Shown one piece after another: positions 1 to 25,480 of a stretch of 64,000 nucleotides of DNA. Source of the DNA: Asterias rubens (lineage: Eukaryota); the NCBI RefSeq assembly GCF_902459465.1, contig NC_047070.1, positions 13,454,001 to 13,518,000 on the forward strand, read 5' to 3'. The notes under the pieces were generated by a model. That model made no database searches and was not told the DNA's origin. It was given only the letters and a program-made list of their open reading frames with translations. The translations under genes and the position numbers were made by a program. The first letter of the stretch is position 1. Each line of letters opens with the position of its first letter.

Positions 1-404
1 GATTTGAAGATCTGATCTTCCAATATCAATTTGCTTTGGTTTTACTACACCTTCCTGCATGGAGCTAGTCTCCAGAGGTACGTTCGTCTCCAAGGATATC
101 TTGTTATCAGAGTTTGTCAAACGCTGTATAGTACTCTCCTCTGTCTGAAATGAGTCTGTCTCTATTTTCAGGTCTATGCTACTTGCATGTTCATGTTGAG
201 GCACTTTGGCAGTAAAGCTTACCACACCTGAGCCTGCCTCGTCAATTCTAATATCTGAGGATGACGTGACCAAAGGGTGAAAGTCGGCTGATGTTGCATT
301 TCTTCGAAGCAAGACCACAAAATCTTCAGTCTTTTGGGGCTTTATCTCTGGCATTGACTGGATTCTTTTTATGCTTCCACTTCCATTGAAATATAAAGCG
401 GTAC
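1..404 (-). CDS. Exon 18 (runs off the window edge) of a Munc13-homology (MUN) domain gene; S/T/E-rich, probably disordered
   Basis: Acceptor ttctttgtacaaAG at 405-406; open frame GTALYFNGSGSIKRIQSMPEIKPQKTEDFVVLLRRNATSADF...GRSDLQI to base 1; phase 1 matches the previous exon. Confidence 0.8.
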
Positions 405-525
405 CTTTGTACAAAGAATAACAATAACGATTATAAACCCACCTCAGATCCTCAAAAATCCATCTTGAGGTATTACTTGAATTGGATGGATCTGGTACTC
501 TATCCCCAAGTCTACAAAATGTTCT

Positions 526-752
526 AGAAGCAGGCATGCAGCCACATCAACCAAATATGACCATGGGGCACCGCAAGAGATCAAAAGTGCTTGATTTTTC
601 ACGAGGGAGGAAAACCGGATGGTCTGGAAAACCCTCGTGGCACATTAGAGAACTAACTCACAACTCAACTCACATATGGCCTTTGCCGGGTATCAAACTA
701 AGGTCACCTTGGTGAGAGGCGGAGCGCTTTACTTAACTGTCCAATGCGGGGC
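526..752 (-). mobile_element. tRNA-derived SINE with V/Meta-type core
   Basis: B-box-like segment and core ggaggaaaaccggatggtctggaaaaccc; second copy at 36621-37045. Confidence 0.6.
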
Positions 753-1153
753 CAGGCATACCAATCTCATAGGGGGTCCAAACATTTGGGTGCTTAGTTA
801 CCATGGGGTATTTGAGAGGATTTTGGACAGCTCTCGGCCAAACCACTGAGGATGTTTAAGAGCAAAATGTAGAACAATGAGAAGGACTTGTGGCGGTAAG
901 ACAACATTGATGACAATATTCAAAGTGAACAACGACAGTAAATAAACACAGAATCAATTAATGTAGTCCTCATTAATATGAGAGATATAACAGTTTGATT
1001 GATTATTCCGGTCAGACCTTTGACAACATAAGAAGATTTATAATTTGTTTTTGATAATCCCAGACTATTATTAAATAGTCAAAGCAGGGGTGATAAAAGT
1101 GTCTCTCTGTGGGACCCAGTATGCAACATAAGTCAAGTGACGTCGGAGCTCAC

Positions 1154-1283
1154 CTTGTTGGTTTCTACCCTTTGAAGACTCCTCTGTGGTATTATTGCGT
1201 TGGTCTTTGGGATGTAGTCTGGAACTGGGTACAGTGGTTGAAGAGCTGGTTTCATCAGTAGGTGTTACTTGACTGGACGTCTC
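1154..1283 (-). CDS. Exon 17 of MUN-domain gene
   Basis: gtttggttttAG ... GTgag; 130 nt, phase 0 to 1; ETSSQVTPTDETSSSTTVPSSRLHPKDQRNNTTEESSKGRNQQ. Confidence 0.85.
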
Positions 1284-1539
1284 CTAAAACCAAACACAAA
1301 CCCAACATTGCGTCAAAGTACAAATGACATTAATGGATTAACCAAAAAAGGCTGGCTTCAATGTCAAATTATGTCTATGTTAGGGCCAATGAAGACACTG
1401 ATGATGTAAACATCAGGCTGAGTAGCCTTGAGACACTCAGGGTGTTTGTGAATTGAAAGATAAACCTAAGTTTTAAGCTCTCAAAAATACAGTGCTAACA
1501 AGTACAACAAATGAAAAATACAGATTTTACACAATAGTG

Positions 1540-1636
1540 TATTTTCCATGAAGAATTTAAGAAGCCAACAAGGGTGGGTTTTTCCCGTTATTTTCTCCCG
1601 ACGCCGATGACCGATTGAGCCTAAACTTTCACAGGA
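1540..1636 (+). mobile_element. Fragment of MITE family B
   Basis: caagggtgggtttttcccgttattttctcccgacgccgatgaccgattgagcctaaa matches the interior of the 16744 and 28975 copies. Confidence 0.7.
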
Positions 1637-1828
1637 TTTTCCCTGTATAGTCCTTTCCTTTGCATCGACATGGCTAATTGTGTTCTTGTTTAATAAAGAT
1701 ATGTGTCAGCATTAAAATATCTGACATTTTTTGGTTGAGGACAATAAGGTCACAACTTGTGCCATTTACAGCCCCAGTCAGTGTTTGGTAGTAGCTACTA
1801 GCCATAACTACAGTCTTTAAAAGCTACC

Positions 1829-2119
1829 GATCAAAGTTTGCAATTTACCTGTTTGGTTTGGACTCCATTGGATGAGCCATCCATTGAGGGGCCCACTGGT
1901 CTGAATGGGGAGGCTGGAGAATGTCTTAAGATGCTGGAAGGATTCTGCCATTGTCTTAGGGGAGGCTCAGGGGATCAAAGTTTGCAATTTACCTGTTTGG
2001 TTTGGACTCCATTGGATGAGCCATCCATTGAGGGGCCCACTGGTTTGAATGGGGAGGCTGGAGAATGTCTTAAGATGCTGGAAGGATTCTGCCATTGTCT
2101 CAGGTGAGGCTCAGGGGAT
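1829..2119. repeat. 144-bp tandem duplication covering the 3' part of exon 16 and its splice donor
   Basis: 1829-1972 and 1973-2116 are near identical (only a few substitutions by eye). Confidence 0.95.
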
Positions 2120-2166
2120 GTCGGCTCTGATGGTGAAGGTGTGTCTTCAATGAAGTCAGGCTCAAA
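1993..2166 (-). CDS. Exon 16 of MUN-domain gene
   Basis: gatactttcAG ... GTaaat; 174 nt, phase 0 to 0; FEPDFIEDTPSPSEPTSPEPHLRQWQNPSSILRHSPASPFKPVGPSMDGSSNGVQTKQ. Confidence 0.85.
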
Positions 2167-2412
2167 CTGAAAGTATCATAATAAGCAGTTGTCATAAGAA
2201 ACAGCTATCATAATAGTGTTTAGAATCAAAATCAATCTGCAAAGTCTTAAGTCAACCTTTTAAAGAAATTTATTGACTTGAAATGCAACTCACTACATGA
2301 TGATGAGATAACTGCCAAACTGAAAAACTCTGAAAACCTGTGACTGAGTCAGTAGAAGTCTGGAGCTTTTCCACAATTCTGTTTCAGCTTGGTCTACGTT
2401 CAATCCCTGCAC

Positions 2413-2666
2413 TAGACTTGCGGACAAGTCGTTAAATGTCAGTCGCGGTGATAGCGTTCCGACTCTTTTCCGAATCTCCACGCGATTCCCGCGGTATTCT
2501 CGTGAGACTGCTGGCCCCGCGAGACTACTGCTCTCACAACTACGGTCCCATTGGGAGTAGAAGTCGGTAACCAGTAGTTCGCGCGAGAGCAGTGATATCG
2601 CGAAAGCACCACCACAACTCAACTATCTCACCGTGGCAGACCATCAACGACTTGTCCACAAGTCTA
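2413..2666. mobile_element. 254-bp MITE, ~39-bp imperfect TIRs, 9-bp TSD
   Basis: TAGACTTGCGGACAAGTCGTT ... AACGACTTGTCCACAAGTCTA; TSD tccctgcac at 2404-2412 and 2667-2675. Confidence 0.85.
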
Positions 2667-3134
2667 TCCCTGCACTGAAAGCACATGGTTTCAAGATTCC
2701 TGATGGAGCTACTGATGGAGCCATGAAAAGGCCCTTCTATTGATTCCTAAGGTGTCCTTTTGATTCAGATGAGGAATCTATCAGTCAGAGCTAAAATCCC
2801 AACATAATAATAGCACAGTTATTCAAGTGTACCAATAGCCCCTTGGTTCCTACTCTGGAGGACCAGATAAGCTAGCACATTGAAGTCTTACACAAACGAT
2901 CCTCCCAAACGTTTGGCAAATGATTTTGTACCATTTTTACTTTCAACCATTTAGCTACCATCGAACGGTTCTTATTTGGACTGTATGCCTCAGCATAAAG
3001 AGGTTACCACCCAATACTCTATGTGATGTTATATGTTGTCTAGGCTTAGCAAATAAGTTAATTAAGAAACATTTTTAGTTAGACAGCTCTTTGAAATTGG
3101 GCCTTGTGATCAAATTTATAGTAAATCAACTTAC

Positions 3135-3240
3135 TTTGTCTGTGTCGACTGTTTTGACCGCTATTTGAGTCAGTTGGTTGGTCATGATCTTCAGCCATGC
3201 TTTTGCCTGGACCAGCATCGGCTGCCTCCATTGCTGAGCT
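3135..3240 (-). CDS. Exon 15 of MUN-domain gene (MHD1-like helix)
   Basis: aaaccttAG ... GTaagt; 106 nt, phase 2 to 0; AQQWRQPMLVQAKAWLKIMTNQLTQIAVKTVDTDK, joining FEP; resembles the W..P....WL.....L......V..D..EP pattern of Munc13-4/BAIAP3 as recalled. Confidence 0.85.
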
Positions 3241-3377
3241 CTAAGGTTTGACATTTGGGGGGGGGAAGAAGAAAGGTAGTTGATATAAACAGTTTAGAAG
3301 TGCTGTTTATGATGTAATGCAGATCAGGGGGTAGTAAACGCTTCATTTCAATTCTTTTATTCAATGAAGTATGGTTT

Positions 3378-3510
3378 TATAGGGTTTGAGGCATTGCATG
3401 GTGAGGTATCAATATACATTTGGTTTGCGGTAACACCATGTGTGTGTGTATCTACTTGCCAGGTAGAGTTTGTTCCTAGAGAACTGTCTTTCTTTATTCT
3501 ACTACCGCGG
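3378..3510 (+). mobile_element. Dispersed repeat (family K), partial
   Basis: tatagggtttgaggcattgcatggtgagg...tttggtttgcggtaacaccatgtgtg is shared with 22681-22846. Confidence 0.7.
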
Positions 3511-4019
3511 AGTAGATTTTCGGATGTTCGGGAGACTTCTCAGTTCTGTAAAGAACTATCCTGCTTGGGCGGAAGGTATATAAAATTGGCTGGGACTACT
3601 ACTTTAGCTTATAGGATAGTAATAAACTGCACTACCACCGAGTCAGTTCTTGAATTGGTCTCAACGTTTCAACTAGCTTGCTCTAGTCATCGTCAGGAGA
3701 CTGGTTCTATTACAGAGCACAACTAAGGCTTTCATTTTTAACAGCTTCAAAAGATATTGTGTGATGATGAAGAAATTATTTGAACTTGGTTCCTTGTTTT
3801 GTTTCTGATTGTGCACTGTAACCACAGGTACACTTTAACTATGGTTTGGCCGTGTTGTTTTCTCACATTTAAATCTGGGTATCGAACAGAGGCTGCAGGC
3901 AAGGTAAACTAGTCTGAGCCCTCTGTAAACAAGGAATATTAGGTGACCTTGAGTGCTAGGTATTCAGGAGACATGACCAAGATGGTGGTAGAATCAAAGA
4001 TTCTTTGGAGTTGACTTAC

Positions 4020-4108
4020 GTTCTTGGTATATAGTCCCGCCATGCTGCATCAAGATCACTTAGCTTCTGAGCTAATGCTAATAAGTCTTGATCAATACGA
4101 TGCAAATC
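4020..4108 (-). CDS. Exon 14 of MUN-domain gene
   Basis: cttactctttAG ... GTaagt; 89 nt, phase 0 to 2; DLHRIDQDLLALAQKLSDLDAAWRDYIPR. Confidence 0.88.
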
Positions 4109-4477
4109 CTAAAGAGTAAGAATCATAAAGGAAATAAAGCACCATTCATAAATACCTCAGACAGTTTCGCTATTCCTATTGGTGGAGAGCGCATCACGTA
4201 GGGTGTTTAAACGGTTGATAATGACCAGCTGGAGCTGTTTATAAGCGTTTTTGGGGGGATACGTTTGTGCAGGTTAGCCCACAGCCTCGTTCCAAGGGGT
4301 GATCAATCTCGCCATGCCATTTTAGCAAATGAATACGAGGATGCATACTACGCGCACGAATGCATATCCGAAAACTGTCTCAGTCATAAAAATGCAACAC
4401 AAGTTCATGTACAGAGCTCAAGAAAAACGGATGAGTTTCTTACTTTACTATGCCTTTTAACCAAAAAGGCAATTATG

Positions 4478-4628
4478 AATGGGAATAAAAGAGTAGTGAC
4501 TCGTTCTTAAACGACCGTTTAAAACCTTGCAGGGTCGTGGCTGTGCAATAAAGGCCTTTATTACATGGCCACAACCCTGCCGGTTTTAAACGGCAGTTTA
4601 AGAACTCGTCGCTACCCTTTTATTATCT
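4478..4628. mobile_element. ~150-bp palindromic repeat (family F), probably part of a longer element from ~4130
   Basis: Near-perfect hairpin centred on taaaggccttta; related centre-deleted copy at 31030-31150. Confidence 0.7.
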
Positions 4629-5254
4629 TATAAGTTCAGTCTATTGCAGGAATAACACTGATAAAACTAAAGCCTAGCTGTTCATTTGAGAAAACCTTTT
4701 CATCAGGGCGACTTGATTACAAAAACAAGAAAGTTTAACGCTGGATTCCTTAAAATTAGGCAGTTTGCTCTTAAAGGGTTGATTCACATTTCCGAAGGGC
4801 TGTGTTGCTTTGTGTCAAAAAGGGGGGAGGGACACGCATTAACATTCTGAGTTTTATACATGCCGAAAAAGAGCACCAAACAAGCTTTATCTTGATATAT
4901 CTTACGTTTAGTGTAATCTTTGGTTCCTAAAGTTAAGATTTTTTTAAAAAATAAATTAACTCGTCATCTAAAAATGACCTGTTATTACAGTCTGTTTAGA
5001 AAACACCAAATACCGTTAAAGGAAACAAAGTACATAAAAAAAATGAAAGGGTCAGAATTTGTTTTATTCATCTTTATTGATCAAGAGTTTCTGTTTGAGA
5101 AATGTGAAAATATAGACCCTTGTGAAGCAAGAAACTGCATGTCACAAAAATATGTTTAATTGTTTGTTTTTATCCTCCTACCACTCAACAGCCCGTACTC
5201 AGAAATGGGCTGTGCAACAAGCGACTCATTTTTATAGGGCCCATCACATTTTAC

Positions 5255-5506
5255 GTGACACTTGTGTCCCTGAGCAAGACACTTCACTGTAATTGCTTCT
5301 CTCCACCCAGGTGTCAATGGGTACCTGTGAGGGCAGAGTTGGTTCTTGTGATTGATTAATTTACATATTTGGGGGCACAGACTGTACACTCCCCAGGGAG
5401 CTGAGATGGTTAAGGAATGATTTTAGGCCCAGTGACCAGGGGTAATAATGTTGAAGGGCCATGAGCGTCACTGCGTGACGGACCTGAGCGCTATATAAGA
5501 AGCCAC

Positions 5507-5592
<86 letters not shown>
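5255..5592 (+). mobile_element. 5'-truncated SINE (Deu-like core) ending in a (TAT)n tail
   Basis: gtgacacttgtgtccctgagcaagacactt...ctctccacccaggtgtcaatgggtacc core; gcgctatataagaa then ~28 ATT units at 5507-5592. Confidence 0.75.
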
Positions 5593-5593
<1 letters not shown>

Positions 5594-5639
5594 AAAAAGG
5601 ACAGTCCCTGCAAACTTTTTAGAAAAATGAGTTACTTAC

Positions 5640-5736
5640 CTTGTTAATATCTGTCATTTCACACACCAGATGGACATCTGACATTAGACTGGAATAGAAG
5701 GTTGTAGCAGCTAGCTTGACTACGTTCTGTTTATAT
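5640..5736 (-). CDS. Exon 13 of MUN-domain gene
   Basis: tgattacccAG ... GTaagt; 97 nt, phase 2 to 0; YKQNVVKLAATTFYSSLMSDVHLVCEMTDINK. Confidence 0.88.
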
Positions 5737-6197
5737 CTGGGTAATCAACATGATGAACACAGCAAAACAAAAAGGGTTAACAATTTAAAATGACTTCACT
5801 TGTTGCAGTGTTGTATTGGTAATGAGAAATTAAGGTACAATATAGAATCCCTTTTGGTAGCTGTGGTAGAAAGCATGAGAAATGACACTAGAGAAACCCT
5901 TGCGCAGTGCCCAGTTGAATGCAACTACTATTCAAGCAGAATTAAAAGACAGCAAGTCACGTTTCATCAAAACAATTTGAATCTGTTGGCATTTTGGCTG
6001 ATTACAACCAAGCATGATTGTTTGAGATTAAGAACAGGTATTAACAATGCACTGAATACTCAGCATGATTTTACTGTTTTTGCTAATGTTGGTACTGTAT
6101 TTAGTAGTGTTTGTACCATTTGAGCCGCCAATGCTGTCACACTGCACAGTACAGTTAGTATTGGATCCTATGAGTAAAGTTCCCACTAATTCCTTAC

Positions 6198-6271
6198 CTG
6201 CTGAAGACACTCTGGTAACAGTCATGGCATCTCGTGACATCTGCCTTTGCACAACCAACTAACTTTGACAC
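6198..6271 (-). CDS. Exon 12 of MUN-domain gene
   Basis: ctttgttgtcAG ... GTaagg; 74 nt, phase 0 to 2; VSKLVGCAKADVTRCHDCYQSVFS. Confidence 0.85.
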
Positions 6272-6931
6272 CTGACAACAAAGTAACAAAGCAATGTTTG
6301 CATAATGATAAGACATCCCCTGATCTACTTTTCCCAGCTCTGTGTTTAACTGTGGGATTAGTGCTGGTGTATGCAAATACTGTAAAAGTAGCATTTCTAG
6401 TCTGGCACGTGTTTTAACAGTGTTTTACACGTGTTTAATGCGAAATGTACAGTGCAATAGTGTCTATATGAGACAATAGAAATTATCCTATCAGTATTAT
6501 TGCTTAATTTGTGATGTTTAAGGTAACATGTTGCATCAGGAGAGTAAACAAGTATATGACATTGTTGAGCAAGTGATAGGCTAGCTCAACCATTACCATT
6601 GTGTTTTAATTCTTAACAAAAGAGTCAACCTTGAGAAGTTAATAAAGTTAACTGAATACCCGTCTGCTTTTATATGTACAGACAGCAATGTCTACTTTAG
6701 AGCCCTACTCTATCTAATAGTGAGAAGGTCAGCTAACTTACTGACGTTTTTTAGCAACATGAAGGAACCAGTGATGAAACAATACATATGTATTGCATCA
6801 TGCCATCGCACGGATACATGTAAATCTTCATTGACTAGGAAACAAAGTGTATGCTTTTTTTTGCTAAAGTAAACACTTCTGCTTATATTTGACCACTTTT
6901 TTTAATGAAATTGGGTGAAGATTTGACTTAC

Positions 6932-7024
6932 TAGTTCAGCAGTTACAGGCAAGATGTAGGTGTTCAAATGAAGCTCAGTTTCCAGTCGAACTTTGTGTCT
7001 GTAATAAGCTTGTTTAGCACTCTC
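6932..7024 (-). CDS. Exon 11 of MUN-domain gene
   Basis: ttcatatttcAG ... GTaagt; 93 nt, phase 0 to 0, the only open frame; ESAKQAYYRHKVRLETELHLNTYILPVTAEL. Confidence 0.85.
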
Positions 7025-7374: not shown

Positions 7375-7763
7375 TTAAAGGCAGTGGACACTATTGGTAA
7401 TTGTCAAAGACCAGTCTTCTCACTTTGGTGTATCTCAACAAATGCATAAAATAACAAACCTGTGAAAATTTGAGCTCGATTGGTCTTCGAAGTTGTGAGA
7501 TAACTATGAAAGAAAAAAAACACCCTTGTCACACAAAGTTGTGTGCTTTCAGATGCTTTATTTCGAGACCTCAAATTCTAAACTTGAGGTCTCGAAACCA
7601 AATTTGTGGAAAATTACTTCTTTCTCAAAAACTTTATTACTTCAGAGGGAGCCGTTTCTCACAATGTTTTATACCATCAACCTCTCCCCATTACTCACAA
7701 TCAAGAAAGGTTTTATGCTGATAATTATTTTGATTAATTACCAATAGTGTCCACTGCCTTTAA
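7375..7763 (+). mobile_element. MITE family A (TTAA-flanked, Kolobok/T2-like), full length
   Basis: ttaa-AGGCAGTGGACACTATTGGTAA ... TTACCAATAGTGTCCACTGCCT-ttaa; 13 copies or fragments in the window. Confidence 0.9.
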
Positions 7764-8362: not shown

Positions 8363-8463
8363 CTTAATGTAGCCTTCCAAGTAACATTCCAACGTGGAGC
8401 CTTTCTGATCTGTAAGTTGTGTTTTAAGATTCAGTACAGATGCAAGGAGACTCACCAAAGCAA
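8363..8463 (-). CDS. Exon 10 of MUN-domain gene
   Basis: ttcttacatgtAG ... GTaatt; 101 nt, phase 1 to 0; ALVSLLASVLNLKTQLTDQKGSTLECYLEGYIK. Confidence 0.85.
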
Positions 8464-10677: not shown

Positions 10678-10777
10678 CTGCTTTGTGACTCGAGTCTTCT
10701 TGCTCCCTGAGGAGTCCCTGCAGGCCACGTTTACTATGCTCATGTAGCTTGACCAAAACATCATGCAACAAATCAAG
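10678..10777 (-). CDS. Exon 9 of MUN-domain gene
   Basis: gttcctttatAG ... GTcagt; 100 nt, phase 0 to 1; LDLLHDVLVKLHEHSKRGLQGLLREQEDSSHKA. Confidence 0.87.
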
Positions 10778-10925
10778 CTATAAAGGAACAACATGATTGA
10801 TAACTCCCAAAATACAAAATATGTATCTCCAATGAAAACACCAAACGTTTGATTCAGAACATGGTGTCCAAGAAAAAAAAAAAAAACAGGGTTTGCTCTT
10901 AAACAGCTACCTGAGCGGAAGGTTT

Positions 10926-11866
10926 TTAACGGAAATGGTATTTAGACTTGTTTATAATGCACTTGTTGACCATTTTAATGTAATTTTGATATGTTTACAC
11001 TTCTGAGTTTTTCGTAATTATCGATTAAAAAATCAGGCCCCAACCTAAAGGTTTTGAAAAACTAAAAACACTTCTGCCGTTGAGAGCGCGCGCCAAAGGA
11101 CAATGCCGCTGACGTCATTTGTTGGAGTTTGCTTTGTTATACCTCCACGCTGCAACAAAGCGGCTTTACAAATTGGAGCTCCCAACTATGACGTTTTAAG
11201 AGTGATTACGTAACGGGGCTTTTCGCAAATCTCTCAGAAAAGCACTGGATAAGGGTATTCAAAATGATTGTTTTTTTACACAATCAAAATCTATTTATAA
11301 TCATATGACTCGATTTCCTTATTCATTGAAAACATTTTAAATGGAATTCAGCAAAGTTCACGACTTGACATTTTCGTTCAAGCAGGTCTTTAACGGAAAT
11401 GCTACTTTAACTTGTTTATAATGCGTTTGTTCACCATTTAAATGTAATTTTTATATGTGTACACTACTGAATTTTCGCAATTATGGATTAAAAAATCAGG
11501 CCCCAACCTCAAGGTTTTGAAAAACTAAAAACACTTCTGTCGTTGACGGCGTGCGTAAAAATGACAATGGTTGACGTCATGTCTGGGAGTTTGCTTTGTT
11601 ATACCTTCACGCTGCAACAAAGCTGCAACAAAGCGGACATACAAATTGGAGCTCCCAACTATGACGTAATATGAGTGATTACGTAACGGAGCTTTTCGCA
11701 AATCTTTCAGAAAAGCGCTGGATAAGGATATTTGAAATGATTGTTTTTTTACACAATTAAAATCCTTTTATAGTCATATGACTCGATTTCCTTATTGATT
11801 GAAAACATTTCAAATGAAATTCAGCAAAGTTCCTGACTTGACATTTTTGTTCAAGCAGGTCTTTAA
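10926..11866. mobile_element. Head-to-tail dimer of a ~465-bp TTAA-bounded element (family D)
   Basis: TTAA at 10926, 11390 and 11863; both units align along their full length. Confidence 0.9.
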
Positions 11867-11972: not shown

Positions 11973-12358
11973 TGAAAGGCAGTGGACACTATTGGTAGTT
12001 ACTCAAAATAATTATCGGCATAAAACCTTTCTTGATTGTGAGTAATGGGGAGAGGTTGATAGTATAAAACATTGTGAGAAACGGCTCCCTCTGAAGTGAC
12101 GTAGTTTTCGAGAAAAACGTAATTTTCCACGAATTTGATTTTGAGACCTCAAGTTTAGAATTTGAGGTCTCAAAATCAACCATCTAAACGCACACAACTT
12201 CATGTGATAAGGGTGTTTTTTCTTTCATTATTACCTTGCAACTTCGATGACCAATCAAGCTCAAATTTTCACAGGTTTGCTATTTTATGCATATGTTGAG
12301 ATACACCAAGTGAGAAGACTGGATTTTGACAATTACAAATAGTGTTCATTGTCTTTAA
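11973..12358 (-). mobile_element. MITE family A
   Basis: Reverse-orientation full copy. Confidence 0.9.
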
Positions 12359-13016: not shown

Positions 13017-13125
13017 CTCTTGCCTGACTATTGTGTACGGATGTAGAGAAGTATGCAACATATTGGACAGTCTTTTTAGCTCCTTCAAGATCATCTCAAT
13101 GTACCATACTTGAAACTCAAAATTA
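13017..13125 (-). CDS. Exon 8 of MUN-domain gene
   Basis: ttgtcctccAG ... GTaagt; 109 nt, phase 2 to 0; NFEFQVWYIEMILKELKRLSNMLHTSLHPYTIVRQE. Confidence 0.88.
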
Positions 13126-13227: not shown

Positions 13228-13277
13228 CTGGTGTTTGCCATGTATTCCAGGTAGATTATCATTCTGTACCACTCTCC
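13228..13277 (-). CDS. Exon 7 of MUN-domain gene
   Basis: ctaaactttacAG ... GTatgt; 50 nt, phase 0 to 2; GEWYRMIIYLEYMANT. Confidence 0.87.
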
Positions 13278-14619: not shown

Positions 14620-15005
14620 TTAAAGACACTAGACACTATTGGTAATTGTCAAAGACCAGTCTTCTCACTTGCTGTATCTCAACATATGCATAAAATAACA
14701 AGTCTGTGAAAATTTGAGCTCAATTGGTCATCGAAGTTGCGAGATAATAATGAAAGAAAAAACACCCTTGTCACACAAAGTTGTGTGCTTTCAGATGCTT
14801 GATTACGAGACCTCAAATTCTAAACTTGAGGTCTCGAAATCAAATCCGTGGAAAATTACTTCTTTCTCGAAAACTACGTCACTTCAGAGGGAGCTGTTTC
14901 TCACAATGTTTTATTCCATCAAACCCTCCCCTTTACTCATTACCAAGTAAGTTTTTATGCTAATAATTATTTTGAGTAGTTACCAATAGTGTCGACTGCC
15001 TTTAA
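14620..15005 (+). mobile_element. MITE family A
   Basis: Full copy with TTAA flanks. Confidence 0.9.
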
Positions 15006-15091: not shown

Positions 15092-15188
15092 CACGCCATA
15101 GCGAAGACCAAATTCTTTAAGAAGTCTTCTTGATGCAGAGGTGAACATAGAGGTTGAATAGCTACCCACACCTTCTCTCTTATCCAAC
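15092..15188 (-). CDS. Exon 6 of MUN-domain gene
   Basis: attctattctAG ... GTaaga; 97 nt, phase 2 to 0; LDKREGVGSYSTSMFTSASRRLLKEFGLRYGV; with exon 7 gives LLKEFGLRYGVGEWY, like Munc13 IVDEFAMRYGVESIY (recalled). Confidence 0.9.
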
Positions 15189-17162: not shown

Positions 17163-17329
17163 CTAATAAGTCTGACCATAAGATCTTGATACTCCTGATG
17201 AACACTCTGCCAGAAGATTGGTTTGACCATGCTGCCGACTGGTGAAGGAAGAGCAAACTGCCAGAACCCTTCAATCAACTCCCCAATGTGTTGTCTCTCA
17301 CTCTGCTGCCAATTATCGTATACTCTAGA
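17163..17329 (-). CDS. Exon 5 of MUN-domain gene
   Basis: gtttgaaatAG ... GTaaag; 167 nt, phase 0 to 2; SRVYDNWQQSERQHIGELIEGFWQFALPSPVGSMVKPIFWQSVHQEYQDLMVRLI. Confidence 0.85.
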
Positions 17330-17820: not shown

Positions 17821-19339
17821 TTCTGCAATAATCAGGCACAAGTCAATATGCAAAGAGATTAATCCATTCACTGTTTGCAGTACCATTAGCCATGGGCTAT
17901 CAACAAATGACCCCATAATCCCCAGAGAAATGGTTGCATGTACATGCAATCTAGTACAGCATCTTGCCATACATGAATGAGGCTTGAAGACATGACCACC
18001 ACCAACAGACAAATAGACTTGAATGCCACTTTACAAATCGGCCGCTATATGTCATGTAGAAGTTTTAAGGGCTAATGTGTGCTCTGAAGCAAACTCAGAT
18101 TAAAAGTTTAATTAAAAGTTTAGTTTTATGTAAGAAGTTTTGAAATAATGTCCAGAAGCAACTTAAAATGGATGTCACTTAAGCTCAAACCATGCTCTAG
18201 TAAAGAACAAAATGAAGCCTTCCCATTGGATGAAAGTTGTCTCACATTTGACACCAATAGCCAAGACCTTATGGGTTTTGCTGGTATGTACACCACGTGA
18301 ATGTCATGGAAGTTGGGTTAAGCCTCTCATATGCAGCCCTTTAAAATCATTAATGCCAAAACTTGCAGACGTTCCATAACCTTACAGTTTGACCTTAGCA
18401 TGCTGCAAAGTAAATAGCACTATATGAACAATGGTTTGCTTCCACTTCCAATATGAAAGTTTCAATGTACTTTGGACATTCTACCATGATTCAGCACAGT
18501 CATAAATATCTTGACAATACAAACATCAAAATAAACAAACCAAAGAAACAAACAAGGCCAGTGAAGTATGAAAAGTGTCAAAACCTCGAACATGTCAAAA
18601 CAAAACAAATGGTCTGCAGTACCCATTACATTAACACTTCATACAACTATCATGCAAAAATGCTACAAAAAGGGAAACAAGATGGCTCAGTTATGCCAAA
18701 TGTACATGTACATGTACAGTGCACGTTTATACGACCCTTTTGATCACACATTGCACTAGTAGTCCATTCGGAGGCATTTCTCACAACTTCTGATTAGTTT
18801 CAGACAGACACAGCTTTAAAGGAAACTTGGGTCTTTGCTTCGAGCCACGTCATGCCATCTAAACTTTATTTGTAGCTACCAGTGGTCCATCCACCAATCA
18901 TGCATTCAAATAAAGTGTGCTCCTTGAGTGATGGGAAAACTTCCTAAAGAACACAGGTTTCTTCCCAAAGAACCCAGGTTTCCTCCTAAATAAAAGAACA
19001 CATGTTTCTTCATAAAGAACCCTAGTTTTTTTCCTGAAAAACCCAATTTTCAAGCACAAGAAACTCAACCTCTTGGTATAGCCCGTCTTTTACTGCCTGC
19101 CATAAATCCCCGTAAATGCCCTGGGCAAACCTCTGTTTTAACAATACAAAACGCTAAGCTGATAACACTTTATCTGTCTCGTGATTTAGAGGCTTCACTC
19201 AGGGAACTAGTGGATCACGTGTACAACGTATGACGTTCCAAGAATTAGCCAGATATTTGTTGACTTTGATGGAACAATCTTTATTTGCATCTGGATATAG
19301 GGTGAACATCAGTTGAATAGAAATAGTGGTGCAAATATG

Positions 19340-19790
19340 TTTCATTTATTAAAACAATATGACCAAAGAATAATTGACTAGAGGTAGATTTTAACCTGTG
19401 ATTTACAATCCAACGCACTACAAACTGAGTTATCTAGCCTATATTGGCAGTCTCGCTATTTTGTCAATATCTCTGTGGGTGTCAGTCATAAGCCATTTAA
19501 CCTGTAACTGCAGTGATCCTTCTCCTGTTGCTTCGTAGATTGTATCATGAACCTGGCTACAGTTACCAGGTTGACTGGCTTCTGACTGGCATCCTCGAAC
19601 AAAGATATTGACAAAAGAGGGAGATTGCTATAAAGGGCTATATATAATGTAGCTCAGTTGGTAGAGCACCGCCACATTGATTCAGAGATCACAGGTTCAA
19701 ATCCTGCTCTAGACAATAGTTTTTGTTCAACTTTAGCAAATTAACAAAAGTTTACCCAGTCAGTTTCCCTTGTGGTTTATTACATTTTTA
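19340..19790. mobile_element. Palindromic element with two outward-facing tRNA-like modules
   Basis: Arms ~19368-19512 and ~19555-19725 are inverted copies; right arm has A box tagctcagttggtagagc and B box ggttcaaatcc. Confidence 0.75.
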
Positions 19791-19926
19791 AAACAAACAA
19801 CCTATTGCAGATGTATGGTTTCATAATTTGGATCACAGACAATTCTAGAAGACTAGAGAATTATTAAAACTAAGCATCTCTTTAAAGCTAGCCATACTTT
19901 CAAGTGATAAGATAATCTCTGTTTAC

Positions 19927-20007
19927 CTTAAAAGCTTGTGGATGATAGAATGGATGCTTGTTGTTTTCAACGACACTCAGCCTGCTCACCAACTCCTCAA
20001 CAAGAAT
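19927..20007 (-). CDS. Exon 4 of MUN-domain gene
   Basis: cttgtaccttgcAG ... GTaaac; 81 nt, phase 0 to 0; ILVEELVSRLSVVENNKHPFYHPQAFK. Confidence 0.85.
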
Positions 20008-20050
20008 CTGCAAGGTACAAGTACATGTATATAATGGATATTAGACTATA

Positions 20051-22440
20051 CACAGGTACCTTGATGCTAAAGACCCCTTCCACAATGCACAATGCACCTT
20101 CACAGGTACCTTGATGCTAAAGACCCCTTCCACAACGCACAATACACCTTCACAGGTACCTTGATGCTAAAGACCCCTTCCACAATGCACAATGCACCTT
20201 CACAGGTACCTTGATGCTAAAGACCCCTTCCACAATGCACCTTCACAGGTACCTTGATGCTAAAGACCCCTTCCACAACGCACAATGCACCTTCACAGGT
20301 ACCTTGATGCTAAAGACCCCTTCCACAACGCACAATGCACCTTCACAGGTACCTTGAAGCTAAAGACCCCTTCCACAATGCACAATGCACCTTCACAGGT
20401 ACCTTGATGCTAAAGACCCCTTCCACAATGCACCTTCACAGGTACCTTGATGCTAAAGACACCTTCCACAACGCACAATGCACCTAAAAAGGTACCATGA
20501 TGCTAAAGATCCCTTCCACAACGCACAATGCAACTTCACAGGTACCTTGATGCTAAAGATCCCTTCCACAACGCACAATGCACCTTCACAGGTACCTTGA
20601 TGCTAAAGATCCCTTCCACAACGCACAATGCACCTTCACAGGTACCTTGATGCTAAAGACACCTTCCACAACGCACAATGCACCTACACAGGTACCTTGA
20701 TGCTCAAGACCCCTTCCACAACGCACAATGCACCTTCACAGGTACCTTGATGCTAAAGATCCCTTCCACAGCGCACAATGCACCTTCACAGGTACCTTGA
20801 TGCTAAAGACCCCTTCCACAGCACACAATGCACCTTCACAGGTACCTTGATGCTAAAGACCCCTTCCACAACGCACAATGCACCTTCACAGGTACCTTGA
20901 TGCTAAAGACCCCGTCCACAATGCACAATGCACCTTCACAGGTACCTTGATGCTAAAGACCCCTTCCACAACGCACAATGCACCTTCACAGGTACCTTGA
21001 TGCTAAAGACCCCTTCCACAACGCACAATGCACCTTCACAGGTACCTTGATGCTAAAGACACCTTCCACAGCGCACAATGCACCTTCACAGGTACCTTGA
21101 TGCTAAAGACCCCTTCCACAACGCACAATGCACCTTCACAGGTACCTTGATGCTAAAGACACCTTCCACAACGCACAATGCACCTTCACAGGTACCTTGA
21201 TGCTAAAGACCCCTTCCACAATGCACAATGCACCTTCACAGGTACCTTGAAGCTAAAGACCCCTTCCACAACGCACAATGCACCTTCACAGGTACCTTGA
21301 TGCTAAAGACCCCTTCCACAACGCACAATGCACCTTCACAGGTACCTTGATGCTCAAGACCCCTTCCACAACGCACAATGCACCTTCACAGGTACCTTGA
21401 TGCTAAAGATACCTTCCACAACGCACAATGCACCTTCACAGGTACCTTGATGCTCAAGACACCTTCCACAACGCACAATGCACCTTCACAGGTACCTTGA
21501 TGCTAAAGACACCTTCCACAACGCACAATGCACCTTCACAGGTACCTTGATGCTAAAGACCCCTTCCACAATGCACAATGCACCTTCACAGGTACCTTGA
21601 TGCTAAAGACCCCTTCCACAATGCACAATGCACCTTCACAGGTACCTTGATGCTAAAGACCCCTTCCACAATGCACAATGCACCTTCACAGGTACCTTGA
21701 TGCTAAAGACCCCTTCCACAATGCACAATGCACCTTCACAGGTACCTTGATGCTAAAGACCCCTTCCACAACGCACAATGCACCTTCACAGGTACCTTGA
21801 TGCTAAAGACACCTTCCACAACACACAATGCACCTTCACAGGTACCTTGATGCTAAAGACACCTTCCACAACGCACAATACACCTTCACAGGTACCTTGA
21901 TGCTAAAGACCCCTTCCACAACGCACAATGCACCTTCACAGGTACCTTGATGCTAAAGACCCCTTCCACAACGCACAATGCACCTTCACAGGTACCTTGA
22001 TGCTAAAGACCCCTTCCACAACACACAATGCACCTTCACAGGTACCTTGATGCTAAAGACCCCTTCCACAACGCACAATGCACCTTCACAGGTACCTTGA
22101 TGCTAAAGACACCTTCCACAACGCACAATGCACCTTCACAGGTACCTTGATGCTAAAGACACCTTCCACAACGCACAATGCACCTTCACAGGTACCTTGA
22201 TGCTAAAGACACCTTCCACAGCGCACAATGCACCTTCACAGGTACCTTGATGCTAAAGACCCCTTCCACAACGCACAATGCACCTTCACAGGTACCTTGA
22301 TGCTAAAGACACCTTCCACAACGCACAATGCACCTTCACAGGTACCTTGATGCTAAAGACCCCTTCCACAACGCACAATGCACCTTCACAGGTACCTTGA
22401 TGCTAAAGACACCTTCCACAACGCACAATGCACCTTCACA
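20051..22440. repeat. Intronic 50-bp satellite, ~48 units
   Basis: Unit cacaggtaccttgatgctaaagaccccttccacaacgcacaatgcacctt; two 43-bp variants lacking cacaatg. Confidence 0.98.
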
Positions 22441-22680
22441 TGCCCATTCTGTGCGCTTTTTGGGGAGTCAAAGTAAGCATAGAGGAATTGACTTCCAAAA
22501 GGCGGAAATGATAGAAGCACATCGTCGGAGGTGCTTTCCACAGTGTGTCTACAGATGAAGATGGGTGGCAATCAAACATGAATTCTATTATAACAGAACT
22601 CAACAGAGCATCAATCTGATGCAATATAAATCTGCGCAAGACCAAAACTTTAGTTTTGTGGTCTTAGTAACTAAGGTAAT

Positions 22681-22846
22681 ACATAGATTTGGTTTGTGGT
22701 AACACTATGTGTGTATCTACTTGCCAGGTAGAGTTTGTTCTTGGAGAACTGTCTTGCTTTATTCTACTGCCAGGAGATACACACATGGTGTTACCGCAAA
22801 CCAAATATATATTGAAACCTCACCATGCAATGCCTCAAATCCTATA
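22681..22846 (-). mobile_element. Family K copy forming a hairpin
   Basis: atagatttggtttgtggtaacactatgtgtgtatct ... agatacacacatggtgttaccgcaaaccaaatatat. Confidence 0.75.
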
Positions 22847-23407
22847 TATATGGTAATAGACCTTTCTTTTGCAACGTCACAGCCCGAGTTTTTGCCAACC
22901 CAGATTGGAAAACTATGGAAAGCCGTAAGTGCAAATTAAGAAAAGATCGCTATTTTTTGTAACAATGTAACAAAATTTGTTAATTTTGTTAAAAACAAAA
23001 CAAATAATTATGAGAGGTATTTTATTTAATTGAAAGTTTGCAGAAAATGCTGAATTTGGTTAAAACATCTGTTTTTAAGATTGAGTGTTTTACTAATATT
23101 CGGCCGACCATGCCAACCAAGGCGGTTTGTTTATCAACAAAAGAAAGGTCTATACATGTAATAGAGGGAAAAACTATAGAGGGCACATAGAGCTACAAAT
23201 GACACAACAAAATTGATTGGTCTATGAATATACATGTAAGACTTTACTCAACTACATGAACATCTATTTGTGTGGCCATTACACCTGTTACACTGAACAA
23301 CATTTTGGCATGGAGCTATCGTAACATAAACTGCTTTACATATTTTGGAGTGTGAATTCTATACTTGGAAGGACAAAAAATAGTCTGTTCCCTTAGTGCA
23401 TACAAAT

Positions 23408-23685
23408 CATAGAGTTATATATATGTTGATGCTTCTTGCACAAACGTGACGGGACCGCAAGGAGACACGCGCGCGCCATTCTGTACGCGCGTTGAATATG
23501 AAACACACGTTGGAGTTTGTGTTTATTGAACGCTACGCGATGCTGTTTTGTCAACTTACAAAATGGCCGCACAAACACACGCTGTGAGATGCCTGTTTTG
23601 TCAACTTAGAAAATGGCTGCCTGCGCGCATGCCGGGTCGCGTATATAGGCCAGTGCGCCCTCTAGTTCTTTTATATAACTCTATG
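23408..23685. mobile_element. 278-bp MITE family J (hAT- or P-like)
   Basis: TIR CATAGAGTTATATA/TATATAACTCTATG; perfect 8-bp TSD atacaaat at 23400-23407 and 23686-23693. Confidence 0.85.
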
Positions 23686-23746
23686 ATACAAATGTAAGTA
23701 TCATTGTCATATAGGCAGGGAACCTGACAAGATTATTTCTTCTTAC

Positions 23747-24088
23747 CCTTGCTGGTGCTTTACGACCCAGTCCTTCAGTGATCACTTCATCATAGTACTG
23801 ATGTCGCTCCTCGCTTAGCAGGAATGCCTTTCTTACAACACCGGATAACATCTCATTCTGTACTAAGACATCTTCCTCACTCTCTGTGTCACTCTTACCA
23901 TCAGTCCCATCATCTCCAGCTAGAGACACCTTATCTGGAGTAAGTCTAGCCTGGGGGTTCCGTGAAGCCAGGTAGGTAAAATGGGAGCCAGTGAATGGGT
24001 AGGTACCACCAGAAGGAGATAAGGTGTGAGGGTAAGGAGAGTGGGACTGAGGAGAAGATGCTTGCTGAGGAGCACTCAAGACAGGAAA
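23747..24088 (-). CDS. Exon 3 of MUN-domain gene (5' acceptor uncertain: 24088 or 24064)
   Basis: cccttctttgtgctcAG ... GTaaga; 342 nt, phase 0 to 0, inside ORF 23681-24121; ...DGKSDTESEEDVLVQNEMLSGVVRKAFLLSEERHQYYDEVITEGLGRKAPAR. Confidence 0.75.
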
Positions 24089-24465
24089 CTGAGCACAAAG
24101 AAGGGCACGTCTGTACACCATAAACTCCTACAAACAGGCAAATTAGAATACAAATTAATACAAAAACTCCCCCCATTCATTCAGAAGGGATGTTATTTGA
24201 GGAGAAATGAGAAGTTGATACTAGAGGATAATCTAGTTTATCATGAAAATCTCAACAAACTTGGTTTATATCCTTTTAAGTTCTTCAGATTTTTATGAAA
24301 AACTAGATTATCCTCTAACATGTCTAAGATTAATCTTTCAACAACACAAATGTTCACGTATGACACGACATCACTGTTGTTGAAAGTCATCTAAAAATAT
24401 TCCTCCAACAATAATCAGTTCAAGGATTGATTTCCACTTGGTTGTGACTGAACATGGTATTCGAA

Positions 24466-24906
24466 GTGCCTCGATAGTCTAGTTGGTAAGACACTGCTCT
24501 AGAATTGCAAGGGTGTTGGGTGCGAATCCCACCAGAGTAATATGCCTGTGATTTTTTTTCACAGGACTCGGAAAAGTACTGAGTATCAGTGCTTACAAAC
24601 ATTGGTGTATGGGTAAAAACCAAAATTAATATTCTTTATCCACAAAGCAAATTTAACAATTTTGTATATTGTTGCGGTACCCGCTCCCAAAACAAAGGAT
24701 TCAAACTGCCTCTAGCTACACGTACAGGGCAACCTCAGCAGTCTAGTTGGTTAGACACTGCTCTAGAATTGCAATTGAGTCGTGGGTTTGAATCCCACCC
24801 GAATAACATGCCTGTGATATTTTTTCACAGGACTCGGGAAAGTTGAGTTTACAGTGCTAACACACATCGGTGTACGGGTAAAAACCAAAATTAATATTCT
24901 TTATCC
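24466..24906 (+). mobile_element. Two tandem tRNA-derived SINE copies (family S)
   Basis: Heads tagtctagttggt(a/t)agacactgctctagaattgca...gaatcccac at ~24470 and ~24735; third copy at 50810-50960. Confidence 0.8.
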
Positions 24907-24941
24907 ATGGTGCAAATTTGTGACTAATTTAACAAAGTTAC

Positions 24942-25116
24942 CTTTTGTGGCAGTGTTGTACGTGTACTGAGATCCATCCCATCCGAGCTAATAGGACTGG
25001 TCATCCCCAAGTCCTCTACACCAGAATCTTGACCATCTGTATGTACCACTGGTAGCCTCTGGTCTACTGAAGGGGTGTGGCTTGGTCCAACAGAGCTGGT
25101 ACGACATTTCCGAAAT
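24942..25116 (-). CDS. Exon 2 of MUN-domain gene (low complexity, S/T/D-rich)
   Basis: gtttgtattcaAG ... GTaact; 175 nt, phase 2 to 0; FRKCRTSSVGPSHTPSVDQRLPVVHTDGQDSGVEDLGMTSPISSDGMDLSTRTTLPQK. Confidence 0.75.
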
Positions 25117-25373
25117 CTTGAATACAAACACACAAGATGAAGAGAGCATTAATATTACAGTCCTGGTGCAGAGTAGTCTCGCCTGACCTTTTTCATCTCT
25201 GTAAAGTTCCCTTTAAATAAGCGAGTAGCAACTGAAAAGTAGGCAAGGCCAGTATTTCCAGTCAAGCTTTGATACAGTGTCAGTGGCTTGAATGGTCGGA
25301 AACTATACCCCAACAGTATCACCTTCAGGATCAATCAGGAAAAAGCCTACGTATCTTACAACACTGGACATAC

Positions 25374-25480
25374 AACATGTACAAAGTTCTGCTGGCCTGG
25401 TTGATCATGATTGTATGACCCTGACCACAGCAGCCTACTTTCCCTACAAAACACTCTGCTTGTTCTTCCTCCATCATCAT
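25374..25480 (-). CDS. Candidate proximal first coding exon of MUN-domain gene
   Basis: ATGATGATG start, MMMEEEQAECFVGKVGCCGQGHTIMINQASRTLYM, strong GTatgt donor in phase 2 matching exon 2; start codon not verified. Confidence 0.5.

What the first reader, a model, noticed from the sequence alone, without database searches (positions are those of the whole stretch)
1..25480. Non-canonical Munc13-homology (MUN) gene, possibly PATROL1-like in architecture, invisible in the ORF track
Seen: 18 minus-strand exons join in frame with consistent phases into ~830 aa. Recalled family knowledge: LLKEFGLRYGVGEWY matches the Munc13 EFAMRYGV segment, and exons 12-15 follow the Munc13-4/BAIAP3 MHD1 pattern. 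In canonical animal Munc13s a C2 domain sits just upstream of that motif. Here the upstream sequence is instead RKAPARILVEELV...AFKSRVYDNWQQSERQHIGEL...VHQEYQDLMVRL, which recalls the N-terminal helical region of plant PATROL1 (DUF810). Inference: this may be a little-studied vesicle priming or tethering factor lineage kept in invertebrate deuterostomes.
Basis: partly seen in the sequence, partly recalled or inferred. Interest (0 to 1): 0.75.

Follow-up and report, generated by a model that had tools for sequence, protein, structure and literature searches.

The report
Munc13-like gene without C2 domains
These are the first 19 exons of a conserved, unstudied invertebrate gene; its protein has the vesicle-priming MUN rod of Munc13, lacks the usual calcium- and lipid-sensing C1/C2 domains, and carries a DEP domain after the rod.

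Summary
On the minus strand, 19 GT-AG exons (38474 down to 1, then off the window) join into 893 codons with no stop. The product is collinear with residues 1-883 of an uncharacterized 1861-aa Patiria miniata protein (60% identity). RNA contigs confirm the last five junctions.

The MUN reading is supported. A profile of the in-window half hits only Munc13-1 in the PDB (E 1e-7), and EFGLRYGV aligns with EFAMRYGV. An AlphaFold model of the orthologue matches the whole Munc13-1 MUN rod (Z 23.9; other CATCHR tethers reach 15 or less).

No C1, C2 or PH domain is present, and the transcript length leaves no room for missed exons.

Three corrections:
Its second half lies outside the window: the rest of the MUN, a DEP domain and a Cys-rich tail.
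- The family also occurs in molluscs, brachiopods, nemerteans and a cnidarian, not only in invertebrate deuterostomes.
- A specific PATROL1 affinity is unproven.

A neighbouring-window note in this scan had already flagged MUN plus DEP. I rate it a new variant of a known kind, of moderate interest.

The parts
38278..38474 (-). E1, first coding exon (ATG at 38474; aa 1-65, phase-2 donor GTGAGT)
   Evidence: Weak tblastn match to the Patiria N-terminus. ATG, donor and phase fit E2. RNA run X3 holds 0.75 of its words, against 0.10 for a mostly intronic 6.2-kb stretch.
27538..27591 (-). E2 (aa 66-83; HVSNDVQDYF motif)
   Evidence: Matches LHVSRDVQTYF of Patiria. AG/GT borders, and the phase joins E1 and E3.
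24942..25116 (-). E3 (aa 84-142; conserved RKC...DGxDSGxEDxG motif)
   Evidence: tblastn 64% identity, E 6e-17. HMM of the family N-terminus, E 6e-10.
23747..24127 (-). E4 (aa 143-269; low-complexity Pro/Ser stretch, then the conserved VQNEML...RKAPAR)
   Evidence: tblastn E 1e-44; junctions.
19927..20007 (-). E5 (aa 270-296; ILVEELV...HPFYHPQAFK)
   Evidence: 89% identity to Patiria; junctions.
17163..17329 (-). E6 (aa 297-351); the MUN rod begins near its end
   Evidence: Exhaustive phmmer with this exon found the family. The Munc13-1 structural alignment starts at the equivalent of its last residues.
15092..15188 (-). E7 (aa 352-384; ...RRLLKEFGLRYGV)
   Evidence: Invariant E-F-x-L-R-Y-G in 18 family members. 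Aligned to EFAMRYGV of Munc13-1.
13228..13277 (-). E8 (aa 385-400; GEWYRMIIYLEYMANT)
13017..13125 (-). E9 (aa 401-437); donor GAG|GTAAGT
10678..10777 (-). E10 (aa 438-470)
8363..8463 (-). E11 (aa 471-504)
6932..7024 (-). E12 (aa 505-535)
6198..6271 (-). E13 (aa 536-559)
5640..5736 (-). E14 (aa 560-592)
   Evidence: present in RNA contigs
4020..4108 (-). E15 (aa 593-621); holds LLALAQKL, the stretch aligned to the Munc13-1 NF site (YMNLHF)
3135..3240 (-). E16 (aa 622-657); last helix of the N-terminal half of the MUN rod
1993..2166 (-). E17 (aa 658-715); start of the disordered insertion; holds the near-invariant S-x-x-S-[AP]-F motif
1821..1964 (-). Tandem 144-bp copy of the 3' part of E17 with its donor site. 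An in-frame TGA lies between the two copies.
   Evidence: The RNA contig of run X3 follows this copy; those of X1, X2 and X5 follow the first copy.
1154..1283 (-). E18 (aa 716-758); poorly conserved, found only through RNA
1..404 (-). E19 (aa 759-893 and onward); runs off the window start inside the disordered insertion

Best explanation
Window 38474-1 (minus strand) holds the 5' half of an expressed, intact protein-coding gene. It is the orthologue of Patiria miniata LOC119720025, which is about 1800 aa.

Domain layout, read from the window for the first half and from orthologues for the second:
- About 340 aa of mostly low-complexity N-terminus with short, deeply conserved motifs.
- A Munc13-type MUN rod whose first half is encoded by E6-E16.
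- An insertion of about 430 aa, predicted disordered, inside the MHD1 region. It begins in E17.
- The second half of the MUN rod, including MHD2.
- A DEP domain, itself interrupted by a disordered loop.
- A short helical end and a Cys-rich, often CaaX-like C-terminus.
- No C1, C2 or PH domain anywhere.

Shown here: the gene structure, its transcription and splicing, the MUN homology by both sequence and fold, the DEP domain, the absence of C1/C2, and the taxon range.

Inferred: like other MUN/CATCHR proteins, it acts as a vesicle tethering or SNARE-assembly factor. Recruitment to membranes would go through the DEP domain and a lipidated C-terminus rather than through Ca2+/DAG-sensing C1/C2 modules. 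Because the residues aligned to the Munc13-1 NF pocket are A and Q here, it probably does not open syntaxin in the Munc13-1 manner.
For: Gene model: 19 GT-AG exons, 893 aa, no stop, 60% identity and collinear with P0012 1-883.

RNA: contigs from four runs reproduce the E14-E19 junctions. One 5588-nt contig leaves only about 145 nt beyond the modelled CDS at the 5' end. E1 is held by RNA run X3.

Family: uncharacterized proteins of 1.5-2.2 kaa in sea stars, a brittle star, crinoids, a sea cucumber, hemichordates, amphioxus, a brachiopod, molluscs, a nemertean and a sea anemone.

Sequence homology: the N-half profile against the PDB hits only Munc13-1, at E 1e-7 over about 340 positions. The C-half profile hits Munc13-1 MUN-CD at E 6e-4, Munc13-4 at 7e-3 and the DEPTOR DEP domain at 8e-10.

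Fold: the AF2 model has pLDDT 75-95 in both halves.
- VIA: Z 23.9 to Munc13-1 C1C2BMUN (562 residues, model 72-1184 against 825-1515) and Z 20.9 to Munc13-4. Sec6, Myo4p, Sec15 and Tip20 reach 15.3 or less.
- Foldseek: UNC13D 1.4e-7, BAIAP3 5.6e-7, PATROL1 2.2e-4, CAPS 5e-4.

DEP: Pfam 33.4 bits against a cut-off of 32.7, found in 15 of 17 members. Fold Z 8.1 to the pleckstrin DEP domain.

No C2, C1 or PH domain in Pfam at E<=10, and no beta-sandwich in either model.
Against: - No function has been tested for any family member, and no paper was found.
- Pfam's own MUN and MHD models do not reach threshold.
- The NF residues of Munc13-1 are not conserved.
- The second half of the protein was studied in orthologues, not in this genome's DNA.
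- The structure models rest on shallow alignments of 16-18 sequences, with pTM 0.53 and 0.42.
- N-terminal residues 1-274 were not modelled. There, the absence of a C2 rests on Pfam, low complexity and transcript length.
- The membrane-anchor and SNARE roles are inference from family knowledge.
Confidence: 0.72

Rival explanations
1. It is the animal member of the PATROL1 (plant 'unc-13 homolog', DUF810) lineage: a C2-less MUN protein inherited from the eukaryote ancestor, rather than a derivative of animal Munc13, BAIAP3 or CAPS genes.
For: - C2-less architecture, like PATROL1.
- The nearest language-model clusters are plant PATROL1-like families (score 0.86).
- Pfam TPR_PATROL1 gives weak hits in 3 of 17 C-halves (best E 1.3e-5).
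- Foldseek aligns PATROL1 359-1058 over the whole rod with the highest TM among full-length hits (0.34/0.36).
Against: - The atlas score is below the tool's own trust level.
- Foldseek E-values favour UNC13D and BAIAP3.
- The N-half profile hits Munc13-1 directly.
- The TPR_PATROL1 hits were few and weak (16.1 bits against a cut-off of 27 in the one member whose score is shown) and lie only in the MHD2 region.
- PATROL1 has neither a DEP domain nor the long insertion.
- No tree could be built.
Confidence: 0.15
2. It is a generic CATCHR-type tethering subunit (exocyst-, GARP- or Dsl1-like) that merely resembles MUN because all such rods look alike.
For: Sec6, Sec15, Tip20, the myosin-V tail and syndetin all appear among the fold matches. 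Helical rods give inflated Z-scores.
Against: - Munc13 chains stand 6-8 Z units above every other CATCHR protein and cover both halves.
- Sequence profiles hit only Munc13 among all PDB chains for the rod.
- The EFxxRYGV motif is shared.
Confidence: 0.05
3. It is an ordinary BAIAP3/UNC13D orthologue whose C2 exons were missed.
For: The best Foldseek E-values are to UNC13D and BAIAP3.
Against: - Five full-length orthologue models from RefSeq and GenBank have no C2.
- The transcript contig length leaves no room for extra exons 5' of E14.
- The region after the MUN rod is a DEP domain and not C2B.
Confidence: 0.02
4. It is a decaying or non-functional gene copy.
For: A partial exon duplication with an in-frame stop lies just after E17.
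Against: - No stop or frameshift in 893 codons, and all splice sites are canonical.
- Spliced RNA contigs in several runs.
- Strong conservation from the cnidarian to echinoderms.
Confidence: 0.03

Closest known systems
Munc13-1 / UNC13A MUN domain (PDB 5UE8, 7T7C, 3SWH, 4Y21)
   Same: Same elongated A-D helical rod over its whole length (Z 23.9, 562 aligned residues). Significant sequence similarity in both halves (E 1e-7 and 6e-4). Shared EFxxRYGV motif, and a conserved S-x-S-x-x-D at the start of the family's C-half that, by my own unaided comparison, resembles the SCSVVD seen in Munc13-1.
   Different: - No C1, C2B, C2C or calmodulin-binding region.
- A disordered insertion of about 430 aa splits the rod within MHD1.
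- The NF-pocket residues (N1128, F1131) align to A and Q here, and to S/A/G and Y/F/H in most of the family.
- A DEP domain follows the rod.
Munc13-4 (UNC13D) and BAIAP3
   Same: Best Foldseek E-values (1.4e-7, 5.6e-7), with the alignment running from just after their C2A to just before their C2B. Z 20.9 to the Munc13-4-Rab27a structure.
   Different: Both flanking C2 domains are absent. The N-half profile does not hit the Munc13-4 sequence at E<=10. The C-half hit is weak (7e-3).
PATROL1 (Arabidopsis 'protein unc-13 homolog', Q8RX56; Pfam DUF810 / TPR_PATROL1)
   Same: A MUN protein without C1 or C2. A whole-rod fold match, weak TPR_PATROL1 hits and the nearest language-model neighbours.
   Different: PATROL1 has no DEP domain, no long insertion and no Cys-rich C-terminus. 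Orthology is untested.
CAPS / CADPS
   Same: Its partial MUN aligns to the N-half (Foldseek 5e-4, model 28-416).
   Different: CAPS has C2 and PH domains upstream and lacks the full C-D subdomains. Neither C2 nor PH is found here.
DEP domains of DEPTOR, P-Rex1, pleckstrin and DEPDC5
   Same: The domain after the MUN rod matches by sequence (E 8e-10) and by fold (Z 7.7-8.1). It lies outside the window.
   Different: It is attached to a MUN rod, a combination I found in no paper. It appears to be interrupted by a disordered loop of about 200 aa.

Membership tests
MUN-domain superfamily (Munc13 / CAPS / PATROL1 / Git1) | Elongated multi-subdomain CATCHR-type helical rod closest to the Munc13 MUN domain | tested here: met
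   AF2 model of orthologue P0012:275-1474. VIA gives Z 23.9 to 5UE8 and 20.9 to Munc13-4, against 15.3 or less for other CATCHR proteins. Foldseek results. The window encodes the first half (E6-E16).
MUN-domain superfamily (Munc13 / CAPS / PATROL1 / Git1) | Significant sequence similarity to a bona fide MUN domain | tested here: met
   N-half profile against PDB sequences: Munc13-1 at E 1e-7, the only hits. C-half profile: Munc13-1 at 6e-4 and Munc13-4 at 7e-3.
MUN-domain superfamily (Munc13 / CAPS / PATROL1 / Git1) | Pfam MUN (PF06292) or Membr_traf_MHD above the gathering score | tested here: not met
   No hit in five full-length orthologues. MUN matched at E 0.18 in 1 of 18 N-halves. The family lies outside the current Pfam models.
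MUN-domain superfamily (Munc13 / CAPS / PATROL1 / Git1) | PROSITE MHD1 and MHD2 profiles | not testable with these tools
   The only evidence is the source label 'MHD2 domain-containing protein' on two orthologues. The HMM alignment covers Munc13-1 residues of about 829-1204, which by my memory of the UniProt borders includes the start of MHD1.
Munc13-1-type syntaxin opener | NF pocket (N1128, F1131 of rat Munc13-1) | tested here: not met
   YMNLHF aligns to LLALAQK in the window, so N aligns to A and F to Q. Most of the family has S/A/G and Y/F/H at these positions. The alignment is an HMM alignment, not a structural one.
Neuronal Munc13 (UNC13A-C) | C1 and C2B before the MUN domain, C2C after it | tested here: not met
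   No C1 or C2 in Pfam at E<=10. The transcript length excludes extra 5' exons. The C-terminal model shows a DEP domain and helices with no beta-sandwich.
Munc13-4 / BAIAP3 | C2A-MUN-C2B architecture | tested here: not met
   Same evidence as above. The fold alignment spans exactly the inter-C2 part of UNC13D, residues 285-894.
CAPS | C2 and PH domains upstream of the MUN domain | tested here: not met
   No PH or C2 in Pfam.
PATROL1 / DUF810 | MUN domain without C1 or C2 | tested here: met
   TPR_PATROL1 matched in 3 of 17 C-halves (best E 1.3e-5; 16.1 bits against a cut-off of 27 in the one member shown), and only in the MHD2 part. Nothing matched in the N-terminal 345 aa. Atlas neighbours are PATROL1-like at 0.86, and at 0.6 for the N-terminus alone, which are leads only.
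DEP-domain proteins | DEP domain by Pfam and by fold | tested here: met
   PF00610 at 33.4 bits against a cut-off of 32.7 on P0012:1095-1600, in 15 of 17 members. DEPTOR at E 8e-10. Pleckstrin DEP at Z 8.1. Tested in orthologues; this part lies outside the window.

The most novel reading that the evidence does not exclude
This is an ancient eumetazoan lineage of MUN proteins ('MUN-DEP'), separate from Munc13, Munc13-4/BAIAP3 and CAPS. None turned up in vertebrates, insects or nematodes in these searches, which suggests loss there. In it, the SNARE-priming rod would be steered by a DEP domain and a lipidated tail, that is, by acidic lipid or GPCR-proximal signals, instead of by Ca2+/DAG-sensing C1/C2 modules. 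That would make it a Ca2+-independent or receptor-coupled priming or tethering pathway. The long disordered insertion in MHD1 would act as a regulatory hinge.
Probability: 0.3. Interest if true: 0.7.

Novelty: new variant of a known kind. Interest (0 to 1): 0.55.

Why it matters
To my knowledge, MUN-domain proteins (Munc13, Munc13-4/BAIAP3, CAPS) are the core priming and tethering factors of regulated exocytosis, and in animals they have been described only with flanking C2, C1 or PH sensors.

This family is conserved from a sea anemone to amphioxus. It keeps the rod, drops all of those sensors and adds a DEP domain. That suggests the MUN module was coupled to a different kind of membrane or signal input early in animal evolution.

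It also offers a natural test of what the rod does without Ca2+/DAG control. No member was found in vertebrates, flies or worms in the searches run here, which may be why it has gone unstudied. Sea stars, amphioxus, molluscs and Nematostella-like cnidarians are tractable systems for testing it.

Tried and rejected
- Single stop-free exon pieces against Pfam and the PDB gave nothing. Exons are too short on their own.
- The spliced window protein could not be handed to the database tools, because it has no reference. Orthologue P0012 was used as a proxy, and the window product was compared with it locally.
- Three word-indexed homology searches returned only the family itself.
- The ORF at 19153-19025, which looks protein-like, was rejected as an exon because no orthologue matches it.
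- A family N-terminal HMM did not find E1 or E2. They were found by motif and splice-phase reasoning.
- My first borders for E2, E18 and E19 were off by 1-3 nt and were corrected against the sequence.
- Atlas searches on the N- and C-terminal parts scored about 0.6 and are uninformative.
- Four literature searches found nothing on a MUN plus DEP protein. The Aplysia synapse paper PMC9282427 deals only with canonical unc13.

Full report
**What is there**

The window is eukaryotic DNA of about 38-40% G+C, with short stop-free stretches on the minus strand. Single stretches hit nothing in Pfam or the PDB.

An exhaustive phmmer search with the 56-aa stretch at 17329-17162 found 11 proteins. The best is a 1790-aa Patiria miniata protein, 78% identical over the exon. 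The sources call these proteins 'uncharacterized'; UniProt labels two of them 'MHD2 domain-containing'.

A tblastn of the Patiria and Acanthaster proteins against the window laid out a collinear series of minus-strand matches. A junction-by-junction search for GT/AG pairs that keep the frame and fit the orthologue then fixed the exon borders.

**Transcription and splicing**

RNA contigs from four public runs were laid on window 1-6000.
- They reproduce the junctions 5640|4108, 4020|3240, 3135|2166, 1993|1283 and 1154|404.
- They revealed one exon (1283-1154) that homology had missed.

Two further upstream exons were found by motif and phase.
- 27591-27538 carries HVSNDVQDYF, which matches LHVSRDVQTYF in Patiria.
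- 38474-38278 carries the ATG and ends in a GTGAGT donor in the right phase.
- RNA run X3 holds 0.75 of the words of the 38474-38278 exon, against 0.10 for a mostly intronic 6.2-kb stretch.

The final in-window model has 19 exons, all with AG/GT borders. It encodes 893 codons with no stop and is 60% identical and collinear with Patiria residues 1-883. Over exons E3-E17 the identity is 71%.

**No missed C1/C2 exons**

One 5588-nt RNA contig extends 1824 nt 5' of E14. The model needs 1679 nt of coding sequence there, which leaves about 145 nt. The same contig extends 2761 nt beyond the window start, which fits a protein of about 1800 aa.

Pfam finds no C1, C2 or PH domain in five full-length orthologues, even at E<=10.

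**The family**

Word-indexed and profile searches returned only proteins of 1.4-2.2 kaa. They come from:
- sea stars, a brittle star, crinoids and a sea cucumber
- hemichordates and amphioxus
- Lingula, several molluscs and a nemertean
- the sea anemone Actinia

No vertebrate, arthropod or nematode protein appeared.

The window's species is closest to the two sea stars, at 59-60% identity. Identity is 43% to the brittle star and 37-39% to the crinoid, sea cucumber and hemichordate. It is probably another asterozoan; this is inference.

The proteins share three conserved blocks:
- an N-terminal block (Patiria residues 83-713, inside the window)
- a C-terminal block (residues 1106-1585, outside the window)
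- a conserved tail

The two blocks are separated by about 400 poorly conserved residues.

**Is it a MUN protein? Sequence evidence**

A profile of the N block (18 sequences) was searched against all PDB sequences. It hit only Munc13-1, at E 1e-7 and 4e-7, over about 340 positions.

A profile of the C block hit the DEPTOR DEP domain (8e-10), Munc13-1 MUN-CD (6e-4) and Munc13-4 (7e-3).

**Is it a MUN protein? Fold evidence**

An AlphaFold model of Patiria residues 275-1474 is confidently helical in both blocks (pLDDT 75-95). Model residues 403-829 between them come out at low confidence, which I read as disorder.

- Foldseek against the PDB ranks Munc13-1 and Munc13-4 first.
- VIA-align gives Z 23.9 to Munc13-1 C1C2BMUN over 562 residues, covering model 72-1184 against Munc13-1 825-1515. 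That is the whole rod, starting just after C2B.
- It also gives Z 22.5 to MUN-CD and Z 20.9 to Munc13-4. Other CATCHR rods (Sec6, Myo4p, Sec15, Tip20) reach 15.3 or less.
- Against Swiss-Prot models the order is UNC13D, BAIAP3, fly unc-13-4B, Munc13-2, PATROL1, CAPS.

Pfam's own MUN and MHD models do not reach threshold, so the family sits outside current domain models.

The window encodes subdomains A, B and the start of C (E6-E16). The insertion begins in E17.

**Functional residues**

In the HMM alignment, Munc13-1's YMNLHF aligns to LLALAQK in the window. By index in the 5UE8 construct, and from my memory of the literature, the N and F of that stretch are N1128 and F1131 of the syntaxin-opening pocket. 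The asparagine therefore aligns to alanine and the phenylalanine to glutamine.

Most other family members have S/A/G and Y/F/H at these two positions. A Munc13-1-style syntaxin-opening pocket is thus not conserved in the sea-star lineage.

**The rest of the protein**

This part lies outside the window and was studied in orthologues.
- The DEP domain passes Pfam's cut-off on the sub-sequence, in 15 of 17 members.
- A model of Patiria 1330-1861 shows MUN subdomain D followed by a DEP fold. The DEP fold has Z 8.1 to pleckstrin DEP, and the alignment spans a disordered loop of about 200 aa.
- A short conserved strand and terminal helices follow. There is no beta-sandwich.
- Many orthologues end in a Cys motif, several of them exact CaaX boxes. 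I read this as a possible lipid anchor.

My orthologue analysis agrees with it.

**How it most likely works**

Shown: an expressed, conserved protein with a complete Munc13-type MUN rod and a DEP domain, and without C1, C2 or PH domains.

Inferred from what is known of MUN/CATCHR proteins and of DEP domains:
- It acts as a vesicle tethering or SNARE-assembly factor.
- It is held at a membrane by the DEP domain, which in other proteins binds acidic lipids or receptor-proximal partners, and perhaps by a lipidated tail.
- It is not gated by Ca2+ or DAG.
- The long insertion, with its near-invariant S-x-x-S-[AP]-F motif, may be a regulatory linker.

I put about 0.9 on the identity and architecture and about 0.5 on the functional model.

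**Comparison and novelty**

It works like, and is homologous to, Munc13-family MUN proteins. It fails the architectural definitions of UNC13A-C, Munc13-4/BAIAP3 and CAPS.

It shares the C2-less layout of plant PATROL1. Orthology to PATROL1 remains open because no outgroup sequences could be fetched for a tree.

Four full-text searches found no paper on a MUN plus DEP protein. The genes are already predicted and deposited as 'uncharacterized'. The novelty therefore lies in recognising the family and its architecture, not in finding a gene. I rate it a new variant of a known kind, with interest 0.55.

No N runs occur in the window.

Noticed in passing
window 1821-2119: A 144-bp tandem duplication (2.0 copies, 97% identical) copies the 3' part of exon E17 together with its donor site, and an in-frame TGA separates the copies. 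RNA contigs of runs X1, X2 and X5 follow copy 1 and the donor at 1993. The X3 contig goes from 2123 to 1963, following copy 2 and the donor near 1849, which skips 159 nt with no GT-AG. This looks like an allele without the duplication rather than splicing.
   Followed up: partly
window 20051-22440: A 50-bp satellite of 48 copies (95% identical) fills much of intron 4. It produces the long run of 38-40-aa ORFs on both strands and the strong G/C skew seen there.
   Followed up: partly
window 30639-30998: A perfect 24-bp tandem repeat of 15 copies (100% matches) lies in intron 1. A 52-bp repeat of 4 copies lies at 34989-35200.
   Followed up: no
window 10920-11866: A 473-bp unit is present in two tandem copies (87% identical) in the intron between E9 and E10. 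Short ORFs that recur at about 7400-7750, 11990-12300 and 14680-14980 suggest a dispersed repeat family in the introns.
   Followed up: no
orthologues, C-terminal end (e.g. P0021, P0008, P0016, P0022, P0026, P0027; outside the window): Many family members end in a Cys motif. Several are exact CaaX boxes (C at position -4), others are CC-x-C or C-x-C, and a basic RR(K/R) stretch precedes them. This points to possible prenylation or palmitoylation.
   Followed up: partly
orthologues, C-half of the MUN rod (P0012 about 1181-1260; outside the window): A cluster of invariant Cys, His and Arg residues (DLC..., GCRH...C, MC-x-RINN) sits in a loop-rich part of subdomain C. It may be a metal site or an interaction surface.
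   Followed up: no
orthologues, DEP domain (P0012 about 1487-1775; outside the window): In the AF2 model the DEP fold is completed by a conserved 'HFY-x-F' strand about 200 residues downstream, so the DEP domain seems to be split by a disordered loop.
   Followed up: partly
window 49815-50105: Three adjacent minus-strand copies of a 'DFDG.SLTRRDFVKVT.VKT' peptide motif appeared as weak tblastn noise. They are probably a repeat unrelated to this gene.
   Followed up: no
protein atlas neighbours of P0012: CCDC142 families (vertebrates and arthropods, function unknown) appear among the language-model neighbours at 0.79-0.80, next to the MUN and exocyst families. CCDC142 may be another unrecognised CATCHR-like protein.
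   Followed up: no
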